This document shows positions 847 through 62,431 of a stretch of DNA of 64,000 bases, piece after piece. Each line of letters begins with the position of its first letter. The stretch's first letter is position 1. The stretch covers positions 186,001 to 250,000 of the forward strand of contig NW_027271017.1 in NCBI RefSeq assembly GCF_040938485.1, written 5' to 3'. The DNA comes from Diadema antillarum. Taxonomy: Eukaryota. The notes beneath the pieces are model-generated. The model saw nothing but the letters and a program-made list of their open reading frames with translations, had not been told where the DNA came from and made no database searches. Position numbers and translations under genes: made by a program.

Positions 847-2927
847 CTGAGGTAACAAATGAAAGGCCTCTCTTGTTTAAAAGGTTCTGTAGGTAATTGG
901 TCAAGTCGATTCCTGCAAGGTCCATTCGCTGGACGGCGTGGACGATCGCCTCGCCGTCGCGGACAGGGACGACCTGGCACACGCCTTCCCCGATGTCGAG
1001 GACAAGGGAATCTCGTTGACTCGCCAGGACGGCAGCGTTGGCGAAGAAGATCCCAGGCATGTCATGCTTCTCGATCATCACCTGATTGTCGAGAAGACGA
1101 TTGTCCAGTCCAGATATGTGAAAGAAAACAAACGATATAAATCACGTAGGAATGAAAACGTTACTTTACACTTGTCAAAGATTTACACTTCTCAAAGATA
1201 ACTTGACTGCATTAGAAGGAGCCCATGTTCTGTCATTTTACGGATTATTTGAAGGTGATTCAAGCAGCATTAGTTAACGTAACTTAAATGAGCAAAACAC
1301 TTCGACAACATAGGGAAAGAATGAGAGACGGCAACAGCACAGAAATAAACCGTCCGGTAACTTCTTTGTGTGTATGTGTTTGATTGTTAAATTTTTATGT
1401 TTCATTCATACTTGATCAGGTACAAACAAAATGAATAATTTCTGAAATAATTACACTTTACTTAAAAAGCTAACCCACATTGTCGAGGCATGACAAATGA
1501 AAAAAAAAGGTACGTTTAAAGGGTGCAAGTAAGCTGCCTCCGTAGAGCAGGCATTGGGTAGGGTTATTTGGGGGTTATCATTCTGAACGACAGTGGCCAT
1601 TCTGATACGAGCAACCCAGAATTTTGCTAATGGAAGAGTCGCGTCACGTTACATCTTGTTGCTTGGACTCGAGTCAAGTCTACAGGCTATTAAAGGTCGT
1701 ATTATCCAAACGTCACGAAATTTTGCATGATTAAAGAATAATTTTACGGTAATGGTATACATCTCAGAGTTTTCAAAAAAGGAAAAGAAAAACTAACACC
1801 TTGTTACTTGGGAACACGCTCGTCATTTGTACAGGAAATAACGGTGGGAATTTCTTTCGGGTTCCGAATAAATTCATTTGAATCTTTGGTACTTCTCCAC
1901 GATAAAGCAGTTTCCAGTTTTATCATTCTGAGGAAAAGTCTTAGTTACCTACCACAACAATATACCAGCTTTTGAATAGAATCTTGGAGCTTTTAAGGTT
2001 GCAAAAGGGACACACAGGCTTTAAACACAGATGTCTTACCTCAGTCATCTTTTCCCTTTGTGACTTGGGATTGAAGGGAGGTTCCGTGAACAAGGTGGGA
2101 TGCTCTTCGGGACAAGCTCGATGACTGTTGTAGAAAATACGACCCACAAGCTTCTGAATATCATCCCAGTTTGTGACAACCCCGCGCTGGACGGGGTGCT
2201 GAAGGTCGAGCAGCCCGCGTCTCTCTAGCGCTTCCTCGCCGACGTACCGCAGCTCGCTATAGTACACCATACTTGGCTGGATAAGCTTTATCAAAAAATA
2301 AATTAAAAAAAAATGACATGAAAAGTCCGACAGAAATATATAAGACTTGGATTATAATGCGAGAAGACTTCATAATATCTAGAAATCGAAAGGCCAAACA
2401 TCGGAGTCTTAATAGTATAAACTGATGGAAATACGGATGAAATATGAAACAAGGATTCCATTAAGTTAGAAAAAAATCTGATTTGTTTTTCCTCGAAACG
2501 TCACCATCATCATCTACGGTGTGGCATTACATTGAAACCGAGCGATCTTGCAGAGTAAGCTTCAGGTCGGCCTTTCTTTTGTAAAGGTGGATATATTAAC
2601 TTTGAACAAACTTGTCTTCCCCAGCTACTGTTCTTGAAATAATGATGATGATCATAATTGTCTTAGGGGCACAAATCATAGTTGGTATTGGATAGCACAT
2701 TCCACCACCCCAACCCGCATGATTCATGCGTATGAAGGCATTTGTAACCATCTTTGATGATATACCACACAATGCCAAAGGTACTTGCATTGACATCTTA
2801 CCTGGTGCTTTGGCCTTCCAGCAAGGGCGGGGATAGAAGTTCGAGGTTCGTCTTCACCGGCGAAGCCCGCCTTCCACTGCCCCGACCCGCTGTCGATCAT
2901 GAAGCAGCTGTAATCGAGTTCATTCAT
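847..2927 (-). CDS. Divergent actin-like gene, locus 1 (partial: exons 1-3; last exon lies left of the window)
   Basis: Exons 2927-2802 ([42 protein letters not shown]), 2276-2040 (PSMVYYSELRYVGEE...REKMTE) and 1081-847 (VMIEKHD...LSFVTS-G). All have GT-AG boundaries at actin intron positions 41/121/204. A probable leader intron runs from donor 4426 to acceptor 2985. Confidence 0.9.
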
Positions 2928-3894
2928 CGTGATCGACTCTGGTATCGCAGCGTTAGCAACTGTACGGCTTCAGACCGCGCTTTACTGCGGAAAATTCAAA
3001 CGGGTTACACTGCACGTCACCTTACCCCTTGCCGTAAATACCGAAACATCGCTGATCATGGATATGTTTCCAGAGAACCAACTTACTTATGCAAATTATT
3101 GCTCTACGTGACTCTCCCTAGTTGATGTTGTTCCTGGTGTTGTATAAGATTGATTGTGTATCGTTTCTTCAATTGAAGTTCTGAATCAATACTGTGCCAC
3201 AGTCACGAAAAATTGACAACCGAAAGTATACACATGCAATCAGACAAAACCAGTACAGATAGTCCTCTTGATACACTCAACAATGCGCTGTTTTAGACAG
3301 CACTTGCTAAGGACAGTTCAGCTCATCCTCTTGTATTGTTCTACCGATGGGTCTTATCACCACCTCAACGTTAAGGTTTCTGTTCTCAAGAGAGGTAGGC
3401 CCTAGTGTGGTTGAAATATCTTGTCTAACTCGAATTCGAATCCAGGGCCTCCCAGCTAATAAGACAGAGCTTTATTTAGTACATGCGTCGTACACTATCA
3501 CTGTGCTTTTACGATCTCTCTTCGTGGAAAAAAAATGAAATAGCTGTGAAGATGCTAAGTTCGAGTTGTATGGAATGGATCCAAAACTGAAATCCATTTT
3601 CTAATATTCTTGTTTGTATCCTGATGCTGTAGACAGTCGGCTTAAATGTGTAGTATATCCGTGTCATATATCAGTTTTCTTTCACGGGAGATGTTTTTTT
3701 TTTTTTTTTTTTTTTTTTTTGCTATGGGAGGGGGGGGGGGGGGGTGACCCACTGACGATCGGTGAGTCATGACAAGCAGAGGGCCGTACGTGTGCGAAGA
3801 GATATAGGTCATATTCAGTTGTTCAAGATATTACAAATGATCGACACTGTCCATGCTGCTGACAGGATCCAGCGAGGTTTAGTAGCAGCTATGC

Positions 3895-62000: not shown

Positions 62001-62431
62001 CATCGTCCCTCGAGAAGAGCTACCAGCTTCCCGACGGTCAGGTGATCACCATCGGCAACGAACGCTTCCGGGCTCCCGAGGCGCTCTTCCAACCGTCCTT
62101 CCTGGGCCAAGAGCTGGCCGGAATCCACGAGACCACCTTTAACAGCATCATGAAGTGTGACGTAGACATCCGAAGGGATCTCTGTAGCAACACCGTCCTC
62201 TCTGGTGGGACCACCATGTTTCCTGGAATCGCTGACAGGATGCACAAGGAGCTGACGGCCCTAGCTCCTCCATCCATGAAGATCAAGATCATCGCTCCTC
62301 CAGAGAGGAAGTACTCGGTCTGGATCGGAGGCTCCATCCTGGCTTCCTTGTCTACCTTCCAACAGATGTGCATCAGCAAACAGGAGTACGATGAGTCGGG
62401 ACCAGGCATCGTTCACAGGAAATGCTTTTAA
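59095..62431 (+). CDS. act: Divergent actin, locus 7 (384 aa predicted)
   Basis: Exons 59095-59241 (12-nt insertion before the donor CCG|GTAAAA), 59861-60103, 61139-61385 and 61914-62431. The frame is open throughout. Confidence 0.88.
61331..61741 (+). repeat. Tandem duplication (~200 bp unit) of the exon 3 end plus intron 3 start of locus 7
   Basis: Unit 1 is 61331-61528 and unit 2 is 61529-61741. Both contain ACAGAT..ATGAAGAT..CACCGAGAGAG..TACACCTTC.CGTCCACAGGTAGA and CACTTGCCTTGGGTAA.AGTCGAACACAGACTAATA. Confidence 0.92.

What the first reader, a model, noticed from the sequence alone, without database searches (positions are those of the whole stretch)
847..62431. Seven-member actin/actin-like array spanning conventional to highly divergent proteins, all with one intron plan
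Seen: seven loci in 62 kb, all with introns at codons ~41, 121 and 204 (plus a 5' UTR intron where checkable). Protein identity to conventional actin ranges from very high (loci 5-7) to low (loci 1-4). Established: ancient ARP subfamilies generally have their own intron patterns, and this plan matches deuterostome actins. Inference: loci 1-4 arose by local duplication of a conventional actin followed by rapid divergence. They may be a lineage-specific actin-like family that would usually be annotated simply as actin.
Basis: partly seen in the sequence, partly recalled or inferred. Interest (0 to 1): 0.7.

Follow-up and report, generated by a model that had tools for sequence, protein, structure and literature searches.

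The report
Sea-urchin array of diverged actin-like genes
This stretch of the long-spined sea urchin genome holds seven tandem actin-family genes: three are nearly normal actins of a sea-urchin-wide subtype, and four are strongly rewritten actin-like genes that turned up only in the genus Diadema and are still kept by selection, much like the lineage-specific 'non-canonical' actin-related proteins of flies and mammals.

Summary
The window (Diadema antillarum, JBFRCO010000129.1:186001-250000) carries seven actin-family genes. All have introns at codons 41/42 (phase 0), 121/122 (phase 0) and 204 (phase 1). An eighth member lies 3-8 kb left of the window. Both N gaps are intergenic.

- Loci 1-4 are not canonical ARPs. 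Every piece hits actin first, and the folds match actin best.
- Relatives above 55% identity exist only in Diadema. D. setosum keeps the same gene order and strands. dN/dS there is 0.15-0.30, so these are selected genes, not debris.
- Their ATP-loop, hydrolysis, D-loop and plug residues are rewritten, and the rewritten states are mostly conserved between the two species.
- Loci 5-7 are not plain conventional actins. They belong to an echinoid-wide 378/379-aa subtype (about 90% identical to ordinary actin; locus 7 is 84%), shared with Strongylocentrotus and Lytechinus with the same introns.
- Phylogeny cannot show which actin was the donor (AU p=0.09).

Two blemishes: locus 2 has an in-frame TAA in this haplotype, and locus 7 has lost its intron-1 donor and evolves relaxed (branch omega about 0.47).

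RefSeq already lists these genes as 'actin-like'. This scan already reported a similar cluster on other DNA of this genome.

The parts
847..2927 (-). A1 (locus 1): diverged actin-like gene, exons 1-3 only. Exon 4 and the stop lie beyond the window start. Corresponds to RefSeq XP_071487913.1, 'actin, non-muscle 6.2-like', 377 aa (P0281).
   Evidence: 199/199 residues identical to P0281; locus L003 carries exon 4. Exons: 2927-2802, 2285/2276-2040, 1081-847. About 50% identical to ordinary actin. dN/dS against D. setosum is 0.30.
11507..15069 (+). A2 (locus 2): diverged actin-like gene. In this haplotype it carries an in-frame stop near the start of exon 2. RefSeq gives only a truncated 288-aa model (XP_071487914.1, P0385).
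   Evidence: Exons: 11507-11638, 13014 (ancestral acceptor) or 13041 (downstream AG)-13253, 13722-13968, 14570-15069. dN/dS against D. setosum is 0.15.
13023..13025 (+). TAA stop codon in A2, fourth codon after the conserved intron-1 acceptor (AG at 13012-13013). The second D. antillarum contig and D. setosum both encode glutamate here (protein P0237 and the D. setosum DNA).
   Evidence: A possible rescue acceptor (AG at 13039-13040, phase 0) exists, but its use is unverified.
24713..32535 (+). A3 (locus 3): diverged actin-like gene with a 4.8-kb intron 2. RefSeq model 'actin-1-like' is a 254-aa partial (P0001).
   Evidence: Exons: 24713-24844, 25335-25577, 30402-30648, 32015-32535. 91% amino-acid identity to D. 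setosum A3b (P0121). dN/dS 0.25-0.30.
34824..37917 (+). A4 (locus 4): sister copy of A3 (82% amino-acid identity, dS 0.32). No positional ortholog in the D. setosum interval that was fetched.
   Evidence: Exons: 34824-34958, 36025-36267, 36714-36960, 37397-37917. P0002 is its 99%-identical copy on the second contig.
41044..43798 (-). A5 (locus 5): near-conventional actin of the echinoid 378/379-aa subtype, 379 aa.
   Evidence: Exons: 43798-43664, 42928-42689, 42126-41880, 41561-41044. 98% amino-acid identity to the D. setosum ortholog. dN/dS 0.045.
50795..53290 (+). A6 (locus 6): inverted duplicate of A5 (99.5% amino-acid identity, dS 0.18).
   Evidence: and 59 (inverted duplication of about 5.6 kb: 38926-44536 against 55257-50160). 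Exons: 50795-50929, 51406-51645, 52198-52444, 52773-53290.
59095..62431 (+). A7 (locus 7): direct duplicate of A6 with relaxed constraint and a changed D-loop. The reading frame is open.
   Evidence: Exons: 59095-59229 (or -59241), 59861-60103, 61139-61385, 61914-62431. Counting substitutions private to A7 gives 26 nonsynonymous and 15 synonymous changes (omega 0.47), including D56Y, R62W, G197V and W356C in actin numbering.
59227..59243 (+). Lost intron-1 donor of A7. The CAG|GT of its paralogs reads TAT|CC here. The next in-frame GT (59242-59243) would add four residues (PTSP) to the D-loop.

Best explanation
The window shows most of a tandem array of actin-family genes in Diadema antillarum. 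There are at least eight genes, and the array grew by repeated local DNA duplication of an intron-bearing actin gene.

Three members (A5, A6, A7) belong to a 378/379-aa actin subtype shared by distantly related sea urchins. A5 and A6 keep every nucleotide-binding, catalytic and filament-contact residue that I checked, so they most likely act as working, polymerising actins.

Four members in the window (A1-A4), plus A0 just outside it, keep the actin fold. Their D-loop, hydrophobic plug and several filament contacts are rewritten. So, to different degrees, are the phosphate loops and hydrolysis residues:
- A1: Q137A, H161Q, D157E.
- A2: G15L, K18R, D157A.
- A3/A4: G15L or G15R, K18R, Q137H, D157Q or D157H.

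Inference: these proteins no longer behave as ordinary filament subunits or actin-type ATPases. They more likely act as actin-fold partner proteins, that is, lineage-specific 'non-canonical Arps'. Because mammalian and fly counterparts are mainly testis-expressed, a gamete or germline role is the leading guess.

Shown here: the gene structures, their restriction to Diadema in the collections searched, the conserved synteny, purifying selection, and the retained fold.
Inferred only: loss of canonical polymerisation and hydrolysis, and the tissue and role.
For: - Same three intron positions and phases in all genes, including the off-window A0.
- Gene-tree groupings mirror physical neighbourhood: (A2,(A3,A4)) with support 100/98, and (A5,A6,A7).
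- A5, A6 and A7 are still alignable through introns and flanks.
- D. setosum chromosome OZ188195.1 has A0(-), A1(-), A2(+), A3-type(+), A5(-) in the same order and strands.
- dN/dS between D. antillarum and D. setosum is 0.23 (A0), 0.30 (A1), 0.15 (A2) and 0.25 (A3); A3 against A4 gives 0.30. All bootstrap upper bounds are 0.54 or lower. A5 gives 0.045.
- A D. setosum A2-like fragment that is not under constraint has already picked up stop codons.
- Close relatives are found only in Diadema. The next-best hits are ordinary actins at 50-53% identity.
- PDB sequence searches of A1, A2 and A3 pieces give actins as all 60 top hits.
- AF2 models of A1 and of the D. setosum A3b have pLDDT 88 and 86. 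The best structural match is actin (Z 47 and 44.5, rmsd 1.2-1.5 Å, 50-52% identity), against Arp3 at 31-35% and Arp4 at 27-30%.
- The derived residues in the phosphate loops, at Q137 and H161, in the D-loop and in the plug are mostly the same in both species.
- GC3 of 0.62-0.70 stands far above the 39% GC of the window.
- A5-type clade with S. purpuratus and Lytechinus 378-aa actins has support 97/98 and the same introns. S. purpuratus has the same head-to-head gene pair.
Against: - There is no expression evidence. The collections held only RefSeq gene models for these proteins and no transcript-derived copies.
- A2 in this haplotype has a premature TAA, and A7 has lost a splice donor.
- The protein tree cannot place the divergent genes. 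They sit in an unresolved position inside the ordinary actins, and long-branch attraction is likely.
- No canonical ARP sequences could be put in the tree. Arp1 and Arp2 are excluded only by best-hit ranking.
- 'Diadema only' depends on which genomes are in the collections. I saw no other diadematoid or cidaroid proteomes there.
- Loss of polymerisation and ATPase activity is inferred from residues alone.
- dN/dS comes from a single species pair.
Confidence: 0.65

Rival explanations
1. The divergent genes are old echinoid (or echinoderm) paralogs. On this reading they arose long before the genus Diadema and were lost, or diverged beyond recognition, in other sea urchins. They are not a recent Diadema-specific burst of rapid divergence.
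For: - Stem branches are 0.5-0.9 substitutions per site, against ortholog distances of only 0.05-0.12 between the two Diadema species. At the present rate that implies an age many times the species split.
- The neighbouring A5-type pair is itself conserved between Diadema and camarodont urchins. One paper dates that split to about 250 My (abstract of PMC7299941, seen).
- S. purpuratus has a diverged 373-aa actin gene with the codon-41 intron next to its A5-type pair.
Against: - No S. purpuratus, Lytechinus or Holothuria protein is closer to A1, A2 or A3 than ordinary actin is.
- Rates may have been much higher just after duplication.
- Only exon 1 of the S. purpuratus 373-aa gene could be read. 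It is 70% identical to A5 and not specifically A1-A4-like.
Confidence: 0.25
2. Some or all of the divergent copies are non-functional duplicates drifting towards pseudogenes. Their open frames would simply reflect their young age.
For: - A2 has an in-frame TAA in this haplotype, and RefSeq truncates its model.
- A7 lost its intron-1 donor. Its branch omega is 0.47, with hits at very conserved residues.
- D. setosum holds an A2-like fragment with stop codons and lacks A4.
- No transcript-derived copies were seen in the collections.
Against: - A0, A1, A2, A3 and A5 have full-length open frames and intact splice sites in both species. The exception is the A2 allele in this window, which carries the TAA. 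At dS 0.15-0.19, neutral drift over about 1.1 kb would be expected to leave stops or frameshifts.
- dN/dS is 0.15-0.30, and the upper bounds are below 0.55.
- The rewritten functional residues are mostly identical between species.
- The second D. antillarum contig has an intact A2 (P0237).
Confidence: 0.1
3. Loci 1-4 are members of an ancient, widely conserved ARP subfamily (Arp1/centractin, Arp2, or a testis Arp-T/ACTL type) that happen to sit next to actin genes.
For: Their 40-53% identity to actin falls in the range recalled for Arp1 and Arp2 against actin (from memory, not tested here). Their length (368-384 aa) is actin- or Arp1-like.
Against: - All 60 best PDB sequence hits for A1, A2 and A3 pieces are actins, with no centractin or Arp2 among them.
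- The best hits in 5.8 billion proteins outside Diadema are ordinary actins. No centractin, ARP or ACTL names appear.
- The structural search gives actin first (50-52% identity). Arp3, Arp4, Arp5, Arp6, Arp8 and Arp10/11 give 17-35%.
- All three intron positions and phases are shared with the flanking actins.
- There are no ARP-type insertions.
Confidence: 0.03

Closest known systems
Non-canonical (lineage-specific, 'orphan') actin-related proteins, such as Drosophila Arp53D and the mammalian testis Arps reviewed in PMC8291977; 'orphan Arps' in PMC2441452
   Same: These are evolutionarily young, lineage-restricted members of the actin fold. They diverged strongly from actin and evolve faster than actin and the canonical Arps, yet they are retained. 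RefSeq likewise labels the Diadema genes with generic actin names.
   Different: The Diadema genes form a tandem array that keeps the parental intron plan. Testis-biased expression, the hallmark of the fly and mammal proteins, is untested. There is no long N-terminal tail like that of Arp53D. Positive selection was not tested.
Conventional actin, as represented by the actin chains of the PDB, the Holothuria 'actin, non-muscle 6.2' (P0457) and the ordinary actins among the search hits
   Same: Same Pfam family (PF00022) and same overall length. The introns fall at codons 41/42, 121/122 and 204, which from memory are known deuterostome actin intron positions. A5 and A6 keep all the nucleotide, catalytic and filament-contact residues that I checked.
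   Different: A5 and A6 are only about 90% identical to ordinary actins. They carry subtype markers such as IIMAGMGSK in place of GVMVGMGQK in the D-loop, VFDAGDG in place of VLDSGDG, and a longer N-terminus. A0-A4 are 48-53% identical to ordinary actins, with rewritten D-loop, plug, phosphate loops and Q137/H161 positions.
Echinoid 378-aa 'actin, cytoplasmic' / 'actin CyI, cytoplasmic-like' proteins (S. purpuratus P0472 and XP_796638.3 = P0478; Lytechinus variegatus P0469; L. pictus P0471)
   Same: A5-A7 form a clade with them (support 97/98). They share the derived motifs and the 41/121/204 introns. S. purpuratus has the same head-to-head gene pair.
   Different: Diadema has a third, relaxed copy (A7) and the adjoining block of strongly diverged genes. 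In S. purpuratus only one diverged neighbour (373 aa) was seen, and only in part.
Canonical ARPs (Arp1-Arp11)
   Same: They share the actin fold. Like several ARPs, the Diadema genes have altered nucleotide-site and filament-contact residues.
   Different: There is no orthology. A0-A4 are closer to actin than to any solved ARP, lack ARP-specific insertions, and are restricted to one genus in the collections searched.

Membership tests
Actin family (Pfam PF00022, actin/Hsp70/sugar-kinase fold) | Significant full-length match to the Actin profile | tested here: met
   A1 (P0281) 366 bits, A2 (second-contig copy, P0237) 362 bits, D. setosum A3b (P0121) 378 bits, A5 exon 4 231 bits. The cut-off is 27 bits.
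Actin family (Pfam PF00022, actin/Hsp70/sugar-kinase fold) | Predicted structure superposes on actin | tested here: met
   A1 model: pLDDT 87.7, Z 47.3, rmsd 1.2 Å over 342 residues against actin 4pl7_A. D. setosum A3b model: pLDDT 85.5, Z 44.5, rmsd 1.5 Å over 344 residues.
Conventional (filament-forming) actin | Very high identity to other conventional actins (animal actins are typically well above 90% identical to one another; from memory) | tested here: not met
   A1 50%, A2 50%, A3 53%, A4 52%, A7 84%. A5 and A6 are borderline at 90-91%.
Conventional (filament-forming) actin | Conserved phosphate loops (D11-K18, D154-H161), Q137, and the D-loop, hydrophobic plug and filament contacts | tested here: not met
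   A5 and A6 keep all of them. A7 has D56Y, R62W and a changed D-loop. A1 has Q137A, D157E, H161Q and Y169E. A2 has G15L, K18R, D157A and G158S. A3/A4 have G15L or G15R, K18R, Q137H, D157Q or D157H, and T303P. The D-loop and plug are rewritten in A0-A4. The feature is therefore met for A5 and A6 only.
Deuterostome-type actin gene structure | Introns at codons 41/42, 121/122 and 204, with matching phases | tested here: met
   Searches show the same positions and phases (0, 0, 1) in A0-A7, in the D. setosum orthologs, and in the S. purpuratus and L. variegatus 378-aa genes. That these are known deuterostome actin intron sites rests on my memory of the literature. Searches of the paper library turned up no paper on actin intron positions.
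Canonical ARP subfamilies (Arp1-Arp11) | Closest relatives are members of one pan-eukaryotic ARP subfamily | tested here: not met
   the top 60 PDB sequences are all actin; the best non-Diadema hits are ordinary actins; 50-52% identity to actin, against 17-35% to Arp3, 4, 5, 6, 8 and 10/11. Arp1 and Arp2 are judged by ranking only. A tree with ARPs could not be built because no ARP sequence could be obtained with the tools.
Canonical ARP subfamilies (Arp1-Arp11) | Subfamily-specific insertions | tested here: not met
   alignment. Lengths are 363-384 aa. The only indels are 1-4 residues in the D-loop, a 4-residue deletion near residues 145-150 in A1, and 2 extra C-terminal residues in A1.
Non-canonical / orphan Arps (as defined in PMC8291977) | Lineage-restricted and strongly diverged from actin, yet retained | tested here: met
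   Relatives are found only in D. antillarum and D. setosum. Synteny is conserved. dN/dS is 0.15-0.30.
Non-canonical / orphan Arps (as defined in PMC8291977) | Expression mainly in the male germline | not testable with these tools
   No RNA-seq or expression data are reachable here.
Echinoid 378/379-aa actin subtype (for A5-A7) | Clade with the S. purpuratus and Lytechinus 378-aa actins, shared derived motifs, and shared gene structure and arrangement | tested here: met
   clade support 97/98; motifs; same introns; head-to-head pair in S. purpuratus.

The most novel reading that the evidence does not exclude
Diadema has built, in several genomic clusters, a sizeable family of selected actin-fold proteins that no longer polymerise or hydrolyse ATP. 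They would act as dedicated regulators or decoys. One possibility is capping or sequestering partners for the explosive actin polymerisation of the echinoderm sperm acrosomal process. Another is decoys for actin-targeting pathogen factors. This would be an independent, echinoderm invention of 'Arp-like' functions from an intron-bearing actin gene.
Probability: 0.12. Interest if true: 0.7.

Novelty: new member of a known kind. Interest (0 to 1): 0.45.

Why it matters
Actin is among the most conserved proteins, so duplicates that escape that constraint and are then kept show how the actin fold is re-used. Lineage-specific 'non-canonical Arps' are documented in flies and mammals and remain poorly understood.

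An echinoderm example has practical advantages. It is a tandem array in which parent-like copies (A5, A6), an intermediate (A7) and strongly rewritten copies (A0-A4) sit side by side. A second species is available for comparison. Sea urchin gametes and embryos are classic material for actin biochemistry.

The finding also matters for annotation. RefSeq names these genes 'actin-like' or 'actin-1-like', and two of the models are truncated. They could be mistaken for ordinary actins in expression or phylogenetic work.

My searches of the paper library found no paper describing them. The same scan has already reported a comparable cluster elsewhere in this genome, so this window extends that finding rather than opening a new one.

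Tried and rejected
1. ARP reference sequences for a tree could not be obtained. A fungal protein that UniRef names 'Centractin' (P0386, residues 860-1227) turned out to be a diverged actin, with only actins as PDB hits. Named members of ten divergent representatives from the big search included no ARP. ARP membership was judged by PDB ranking and structural identity instead.

2. The first tree included unrelated divergent actins. It lumped all long branches together, which is long-branch attraction. It was rebuilt without them.

3. Looking up the second S. purpuratus 378-aa protein (P0478), to reach the far side of that locus, failed because it is not on record. D. setosum orthologs of A6 and A7, and whatever lies right of the window, could not be reached for lack of a stored protein id.

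4. Four of the five literature searches found no paper on these genes or on actin intron positions; one search turned up the Arp53D paper used for comparison.

5. The marginal Rfam tRNA hit at 34517-34589 was not confirmed by ARAGORN.

6. I considered whether the array is an assembly or haplotig artefact and rejected it. A5 and A6 are inverted and only about 76% identical outside exons, and the order is reproduced in D. setosum.

7. Joined (spliced) protein models of the window genes were not sent to any remote search, folding or look-up tool. Remote searches used single exons by reference, or stored RefSeq proteins. Spliced CDS were assembled only inside local scripts, from the window and locus files, for alignment, dN/dS and trees.

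8. No contig was taken to be human, and no human sequence was used.
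Full report
**Where the window comes from**

One exon-4 peptide of locus 3 is 100% identical to RefSeq 'actin-1-like [Diadema antillarum]', on a 7.13-Mb contig. Locus look-ups place the window at JBFRCO010000129.1:186001-250000 of assembly GCA_040938485.1. The window has 39% GC and two N runs, at 18927-19090 and 39596-39791.

**Checking the observation**

tblastn with the four exon peptides of locus 7 found seven complete or nearly complete sets of actin exons and nothing else. 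I built splice-site models for each gene.

Every gene is broken at the same three places:
- after the codon equivalent to actin Q41 (phase 0);
- after codon 121 (phase 0);
- after the first base of codon 204 (phase 1).

The last exon then runs uninterrupted to the stop. Junctions are GT..AG, with two exceptions described below.

A1 lacks exon 4 only because the window ends. Its RefSeq protein (P0281, 377 aa) matches my exons 1-3 at 199 of 199 residues, and the missing exon is present in the fetched flank.

The flank also holds an eighth gene, A0 (384 aa), with the same four exons. It lies 3-8 kb left of the window. The array is therefore larger than the finding says.

**The N gaps**

Both N gaps lie between genes, one between A2 and A3 and one between A4 and A5. 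Their flanks map collinearly on the D. setosum orthologous DNA, about 120-145 bp apart. The flanks of the second gap are also collinear with the A6 paralog inside the window. No exon or intron depends on a gap, and no gap letters were read or filled.

**The 5' UTR intron**

A pyrimidine tract followed by AG lies 14-59 nt upstream of each ATG. That is compatible with a 5' UTR intron but is unverified.

**How divergent the genes are**

Against ordinary actins, A5 and A6 are 90-91% identical and A7 is 84%. A3 is 53%, A4 is 52%, and A1 and A2 are 50%. Among themselves, A0, A1, A2 and A3/A4 are only 40-52% identical. A3 and A4 are 82% identical to each other.

**What loci 5-7 are**

These are not plain conventional actins. 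They share derived motifs with 378-aa proteins that RefSeq calls 'actin, cytoplasmic' (S. purpuratus) and 'actin CyI, cytoplasmic-like' (Lytechinus):
- IIMAGMGSK in the D-loop;
- [10 protein letters not shown];
- PMNPK;
- DFDQEM;
- FRAPEA;
- [10 protein letters not shown];
- a longer N-terminus.

They form a clade with those proteins, with support 97/98. The S. purpuratus and L. variegatus genes have the same three introns. S. purpuratus has the same head-to-head pair, followed by a third, diverged 373-aa actin gene. The subtype, and probably the core of the locus, therefore predates the split between Diadema and camarodont urchins. The abstract of PMC7299941 (seen) puts that split at about 250 My.

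A5 and A6 are an inverted duplication of about 5.6 kb that includes introns and flanks. A7 is a direct copy of A6. A5 and A6 are under very strong constraint: dN/dS is 0.012 between them and 0.045 against D. setosum.

A7 is different. On its own branch I counted 26 nonsynonymous and 15 synonymous changes, an omega of 0.47. The changes include D56Y, R62W, G197V, D211Y, Y294C and W356C in actin numbering. Its intron-1 donor is gone: CAG|GT has become TAT|CC. An in-frame GT 12 nt downstream would add PTSP to the D-loop. Part of exon 3 is duplicated inside intron 3. A7 may be a recently relaxed copy or a new variant. I cannot tell which.

**What loci 1-4 are not**

They are not canonical ARPs.
- PDB sequence searches with A3 exon 4, A2 exon 4, and A1 exons 2 and 3 each returned actins as all 60 best distinct sequences. 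The PDB contains Arp1, 2, 3, 4, 5, 6, 8 and 10/11.
- AlphaFold models of A1 (pLDDT 87.7) and of the D. setosum A3 ortholog (85.5) match actin best. The matches have Z 47.3 and 44.5, rmsd 1.2-1.5 Å, and 50-52% identity. Arp3 gives 31-35% identity, Arp4 gives 27-30%, and the other ARPs give 17-34%.
- There are no ARP-type insertions.
- The genes share all three intron positions with the flanking actins.

I could not obtain ARP sequences for a joint tree. Arp1 and Arp2 are therefore excluded by ranking, not by phylogeny.

**Distribution**

A word search with the RefSeq A3 protein found 86-91% relatives only in D. antillarum and D. setosum. The next hits drop straight to about 52%, and they are ordinary actins from all eukaryotes.

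The exhaustive representative search with A2 exon 4 found its own cluster, then nothing above 49% identity. That cluster has three members, all from Diadema.

A profile of A1 plus A2 again found only the Diadema clusters above the actin background. The best single-domain outsiders were the echinoid 378-aa actins, at 53%.

Caveat: I saw no other diadematoid or cidaroid proteomes in the collections.

**Synteny and turnover**

D. setosum chromosome OZ188195.1 (6.74-6.81 Mb) carries A0(-), A1(-), A2(+), A3a(+), an A2-like fragment with stop codons, A3b(+) and A5(-).

The spacer between A2 and A3 in D. antillarum is orthologous to the spacer between the A2-like fragment and A3b in D. setosum. The 3' flank of A4 is orthologous to the 3' flank of A3b. 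A4 diverged from A3 before the species split: dS is 0.32, against 0.15-0.19 for orthologs. It has no counterpart in the D. setosum interval. D. setosum in turn has an extra A3a. The array is thus still gaining and losing members.

D. antillarum also has a young Ty3/gypsy-type element inserted between A2 and A3. Its 187-bp flanking repeats are 100% identical, and it has an intact 1359-aa gag-pol frame.

**Selection**

For orthologous pairs, dN/dS is as follows:
- A0: 0.23;
- A1: 0.30;
- A2: 0.15;
- A3: 0.25-0.30.

A4 against A3 (paralogs within D. antillarum) gives about 0.30.

The bootstrap 95% upper bounds are 0.28-0.54. These genes evolve 3-7 times less constrained than A5 but are clearly under purifying selection. 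In contrast, the unconstrained A2-like fragment in D. setosum has already acquired stops. GC3 is 0.62-0.70 in a 39% GC region, which fits retained coding use.

**A blemish in A2**

In this window, the conserved intron-1 acceptor of A2 (AG at 13012-13013) is followed by ATT GTA ACC TAA. D. setosum reads GAA at that codon. The second D. antillarum contig (1.13 Mb, probably the other haplotype) encodes glutamate there, as seen in protein P0237. RefSeq accordingly gives only a 288-aa truncated model for this copy. A downstream AG at 13039-13040 could rescue the frame, with a shorter D-loop, but this is unverified. This allele may therefore be a null, or it may be an assembly error.

**Phylogeny**

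The phylogeny used LG+C20 PMSF on 32 rows. A2 groups with A3/A4 (100/98), which matches their adjacency and shared strand. A0, A1 and the A2-A4 group cluster weakly (90/87) on stems of 0.5-0.9 substitutions per site, inside an unresolved bush of ordinary opisthokont actins.

Forcing the whole array and the echinoid 378-aa subtype into one clade costs 3.9 log-likelihood units (AU p=0.094). That result is not rejected, but it is not evidence either.

Local origin rests on the shared intron plan, the tandem position, the tree-versus-map agreement, and the alignable recent duplicates. The identity of the donor gene and the tempo of divergence remain open. The long stems, compared with the small ortholog distances, fit an old origin at least as well as a recent burst.

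**Likely mechanism (inference)**

The residue table shows that A5 and A6 keep every phosphate-loop, catalytic, pocket and filament-contact residue that I checked.

A0-A4 keep the fold, and most keep D11, D154, G156, K213/E214 and G301/G302. They differ from actin in four areas:
- The D-loop is completely rewritten and has a changed length.
- The hydrophobic plug is changed.
- Contacts such as Y169, T324, M325 and M355 are altered.
- The hydrolysis machinery is changed:
  - A1: Q137A, D157E, H161Q;
  - A2: G15L, K18R, D157A, G158S;
  - A3/A4: G15L or G15R, K18R, Q137H, D157Q or D157H, T303P;
  - A0: G158S, H161D.

These derived states are mostly identical in the two species.

I therefore think the proteins act as non-polymerising, or atypically assembling, actin-fold partners rather than as filament subunits. 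[quoted passage not shown] 'Orphan Arps' are also mentioned in PMC2441452. A germline role is a guess by analogy only.

**Relation to earlier notes of this scan**

Another follow-up (s1-229747) already reported a 58-kb cluster elsewhere in this genome, with one near-normal and seven diverged actin-like genes. It reached a similar conclusion, and it gave me the species lead, which I verified independently. This window is thus a second instance.

Notes on this window predicted that loci 2-4 are hydrolysis-deficient, that locus 7 has R62W and a rebuilt D-loop, and that divergence is concentrated in subdomain 2. My residue table agrees for the first two. It agrees only partly for the third. Subdomain 2 is the least conserved part in A0, A1, A3 and A4, but in A2 the least conserved part is subdomain 4.

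Joined spliced proteins of the window were not sent to any remote tool. Exon pieces by reference, and stored RefSeq proteins, were used instead. Spliced CDS were built only in local scripts. No human contig was met.

**Verdict**

The feature is real and the description is accurate. The genes are new members of a known kind (lineage-specific actin-like or non-canonical Arp genes). They are already present as generic RefSeq models and unstudied. Interest is moderate.

Noticed in passing
window 19850-24628: Ty3/gypsy-type LTR retrotransposon between A2 and A3. It has an intact 1359-aa gag-pol ORF (20303-24382, minus strand) with protease, reverse transcriptase, RNase H and integrase domains. Its 187-bp direct repeats (19850-20036 and 24442-24628) are 100% identical. 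Flanking DNA aligns to D. setosum up to 19859, and no alignment to the element's interior was reported. It looks like a very young, possibly still active insertion.
   Followed up: partly
L003:16257-20780 (record JBFRCO010000129.1, about 178148-182671, left of the window): An eighth array member, A0 (384 aa). It has the same 41/121/204 introns and is 48% identical to A5. It is conserved in D. setosum (91% amino-acid identity, dN/dS 0.23). The array therefore extends beyond the finding's coordinates, and its full extent is unknown.
   Followed up: partly
L002/L001 (D. setosum OZ188195.1, 6.76-6.81 Mb; merged coordinates 14076-14148 and 23088-23569): D. setosum has a partial A2-like duplicate (the end of exon 3 and exon 4) with in-frame stops, plus an extra A3-type gene. 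It has no A4 in the interval. The array gains and loses members between congeners.
   Followed up: partly
L005:20596-20727 (S. purpuratus AAGJ06000013.1, about 11.24 Mb): Next to the head-to-head pair of 378-aa actin genes, S. purpuratus has a diverged 373-aa actin-family gene. Its exon 1 reads [22 protein letters not shown]... and it has the codon-41 intron. Only exon 1 could be read. It might be a distant counterpart of the diverged Diadema genes.
   Followed up: partly
second D. antillarum contig of 1,134,287 bp (proteins P0002, P0237, P0387): The same array is assembled twice in this genome, on the 7.13-Mb and 1.13-Mb contigs. Protein identities are 96-99%, so these are probably the two haplotypes. 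The copies differ at the A2 stop codon. I did not fetch its DNA.
   Followed up: no
window 61331-61742: A tandem duplication of about 200 bp inside A7 intron 3 repeats the 3' end of exon 3 and the start of the intron (80% identity).
   Followed up: no
window 34517-34589 (+): Marginal Rfam tRNA match (29.4 bits against a gathering score of 29, E=0.047) about 230 bp upstream of the A4 start codon. ARAGORN does not call it. It is probably a tRNA-derived repeat or a chance match.
   Followed up: yes
window 25313-25584, 30395-30677 and 31981-32540 against 36004-36274, 36707-36987 and 37360-37922: Nucleotide identity between A3 and A4 rises from 5' to 3': exon 2 is 82%, exon 3 is 86% and exon 4 is 91%. 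The same gradient appears against the D. setosum A3-type genes. This suggests past gene conversion, or stronger constraint, in the 3' half.
   Followed up: no
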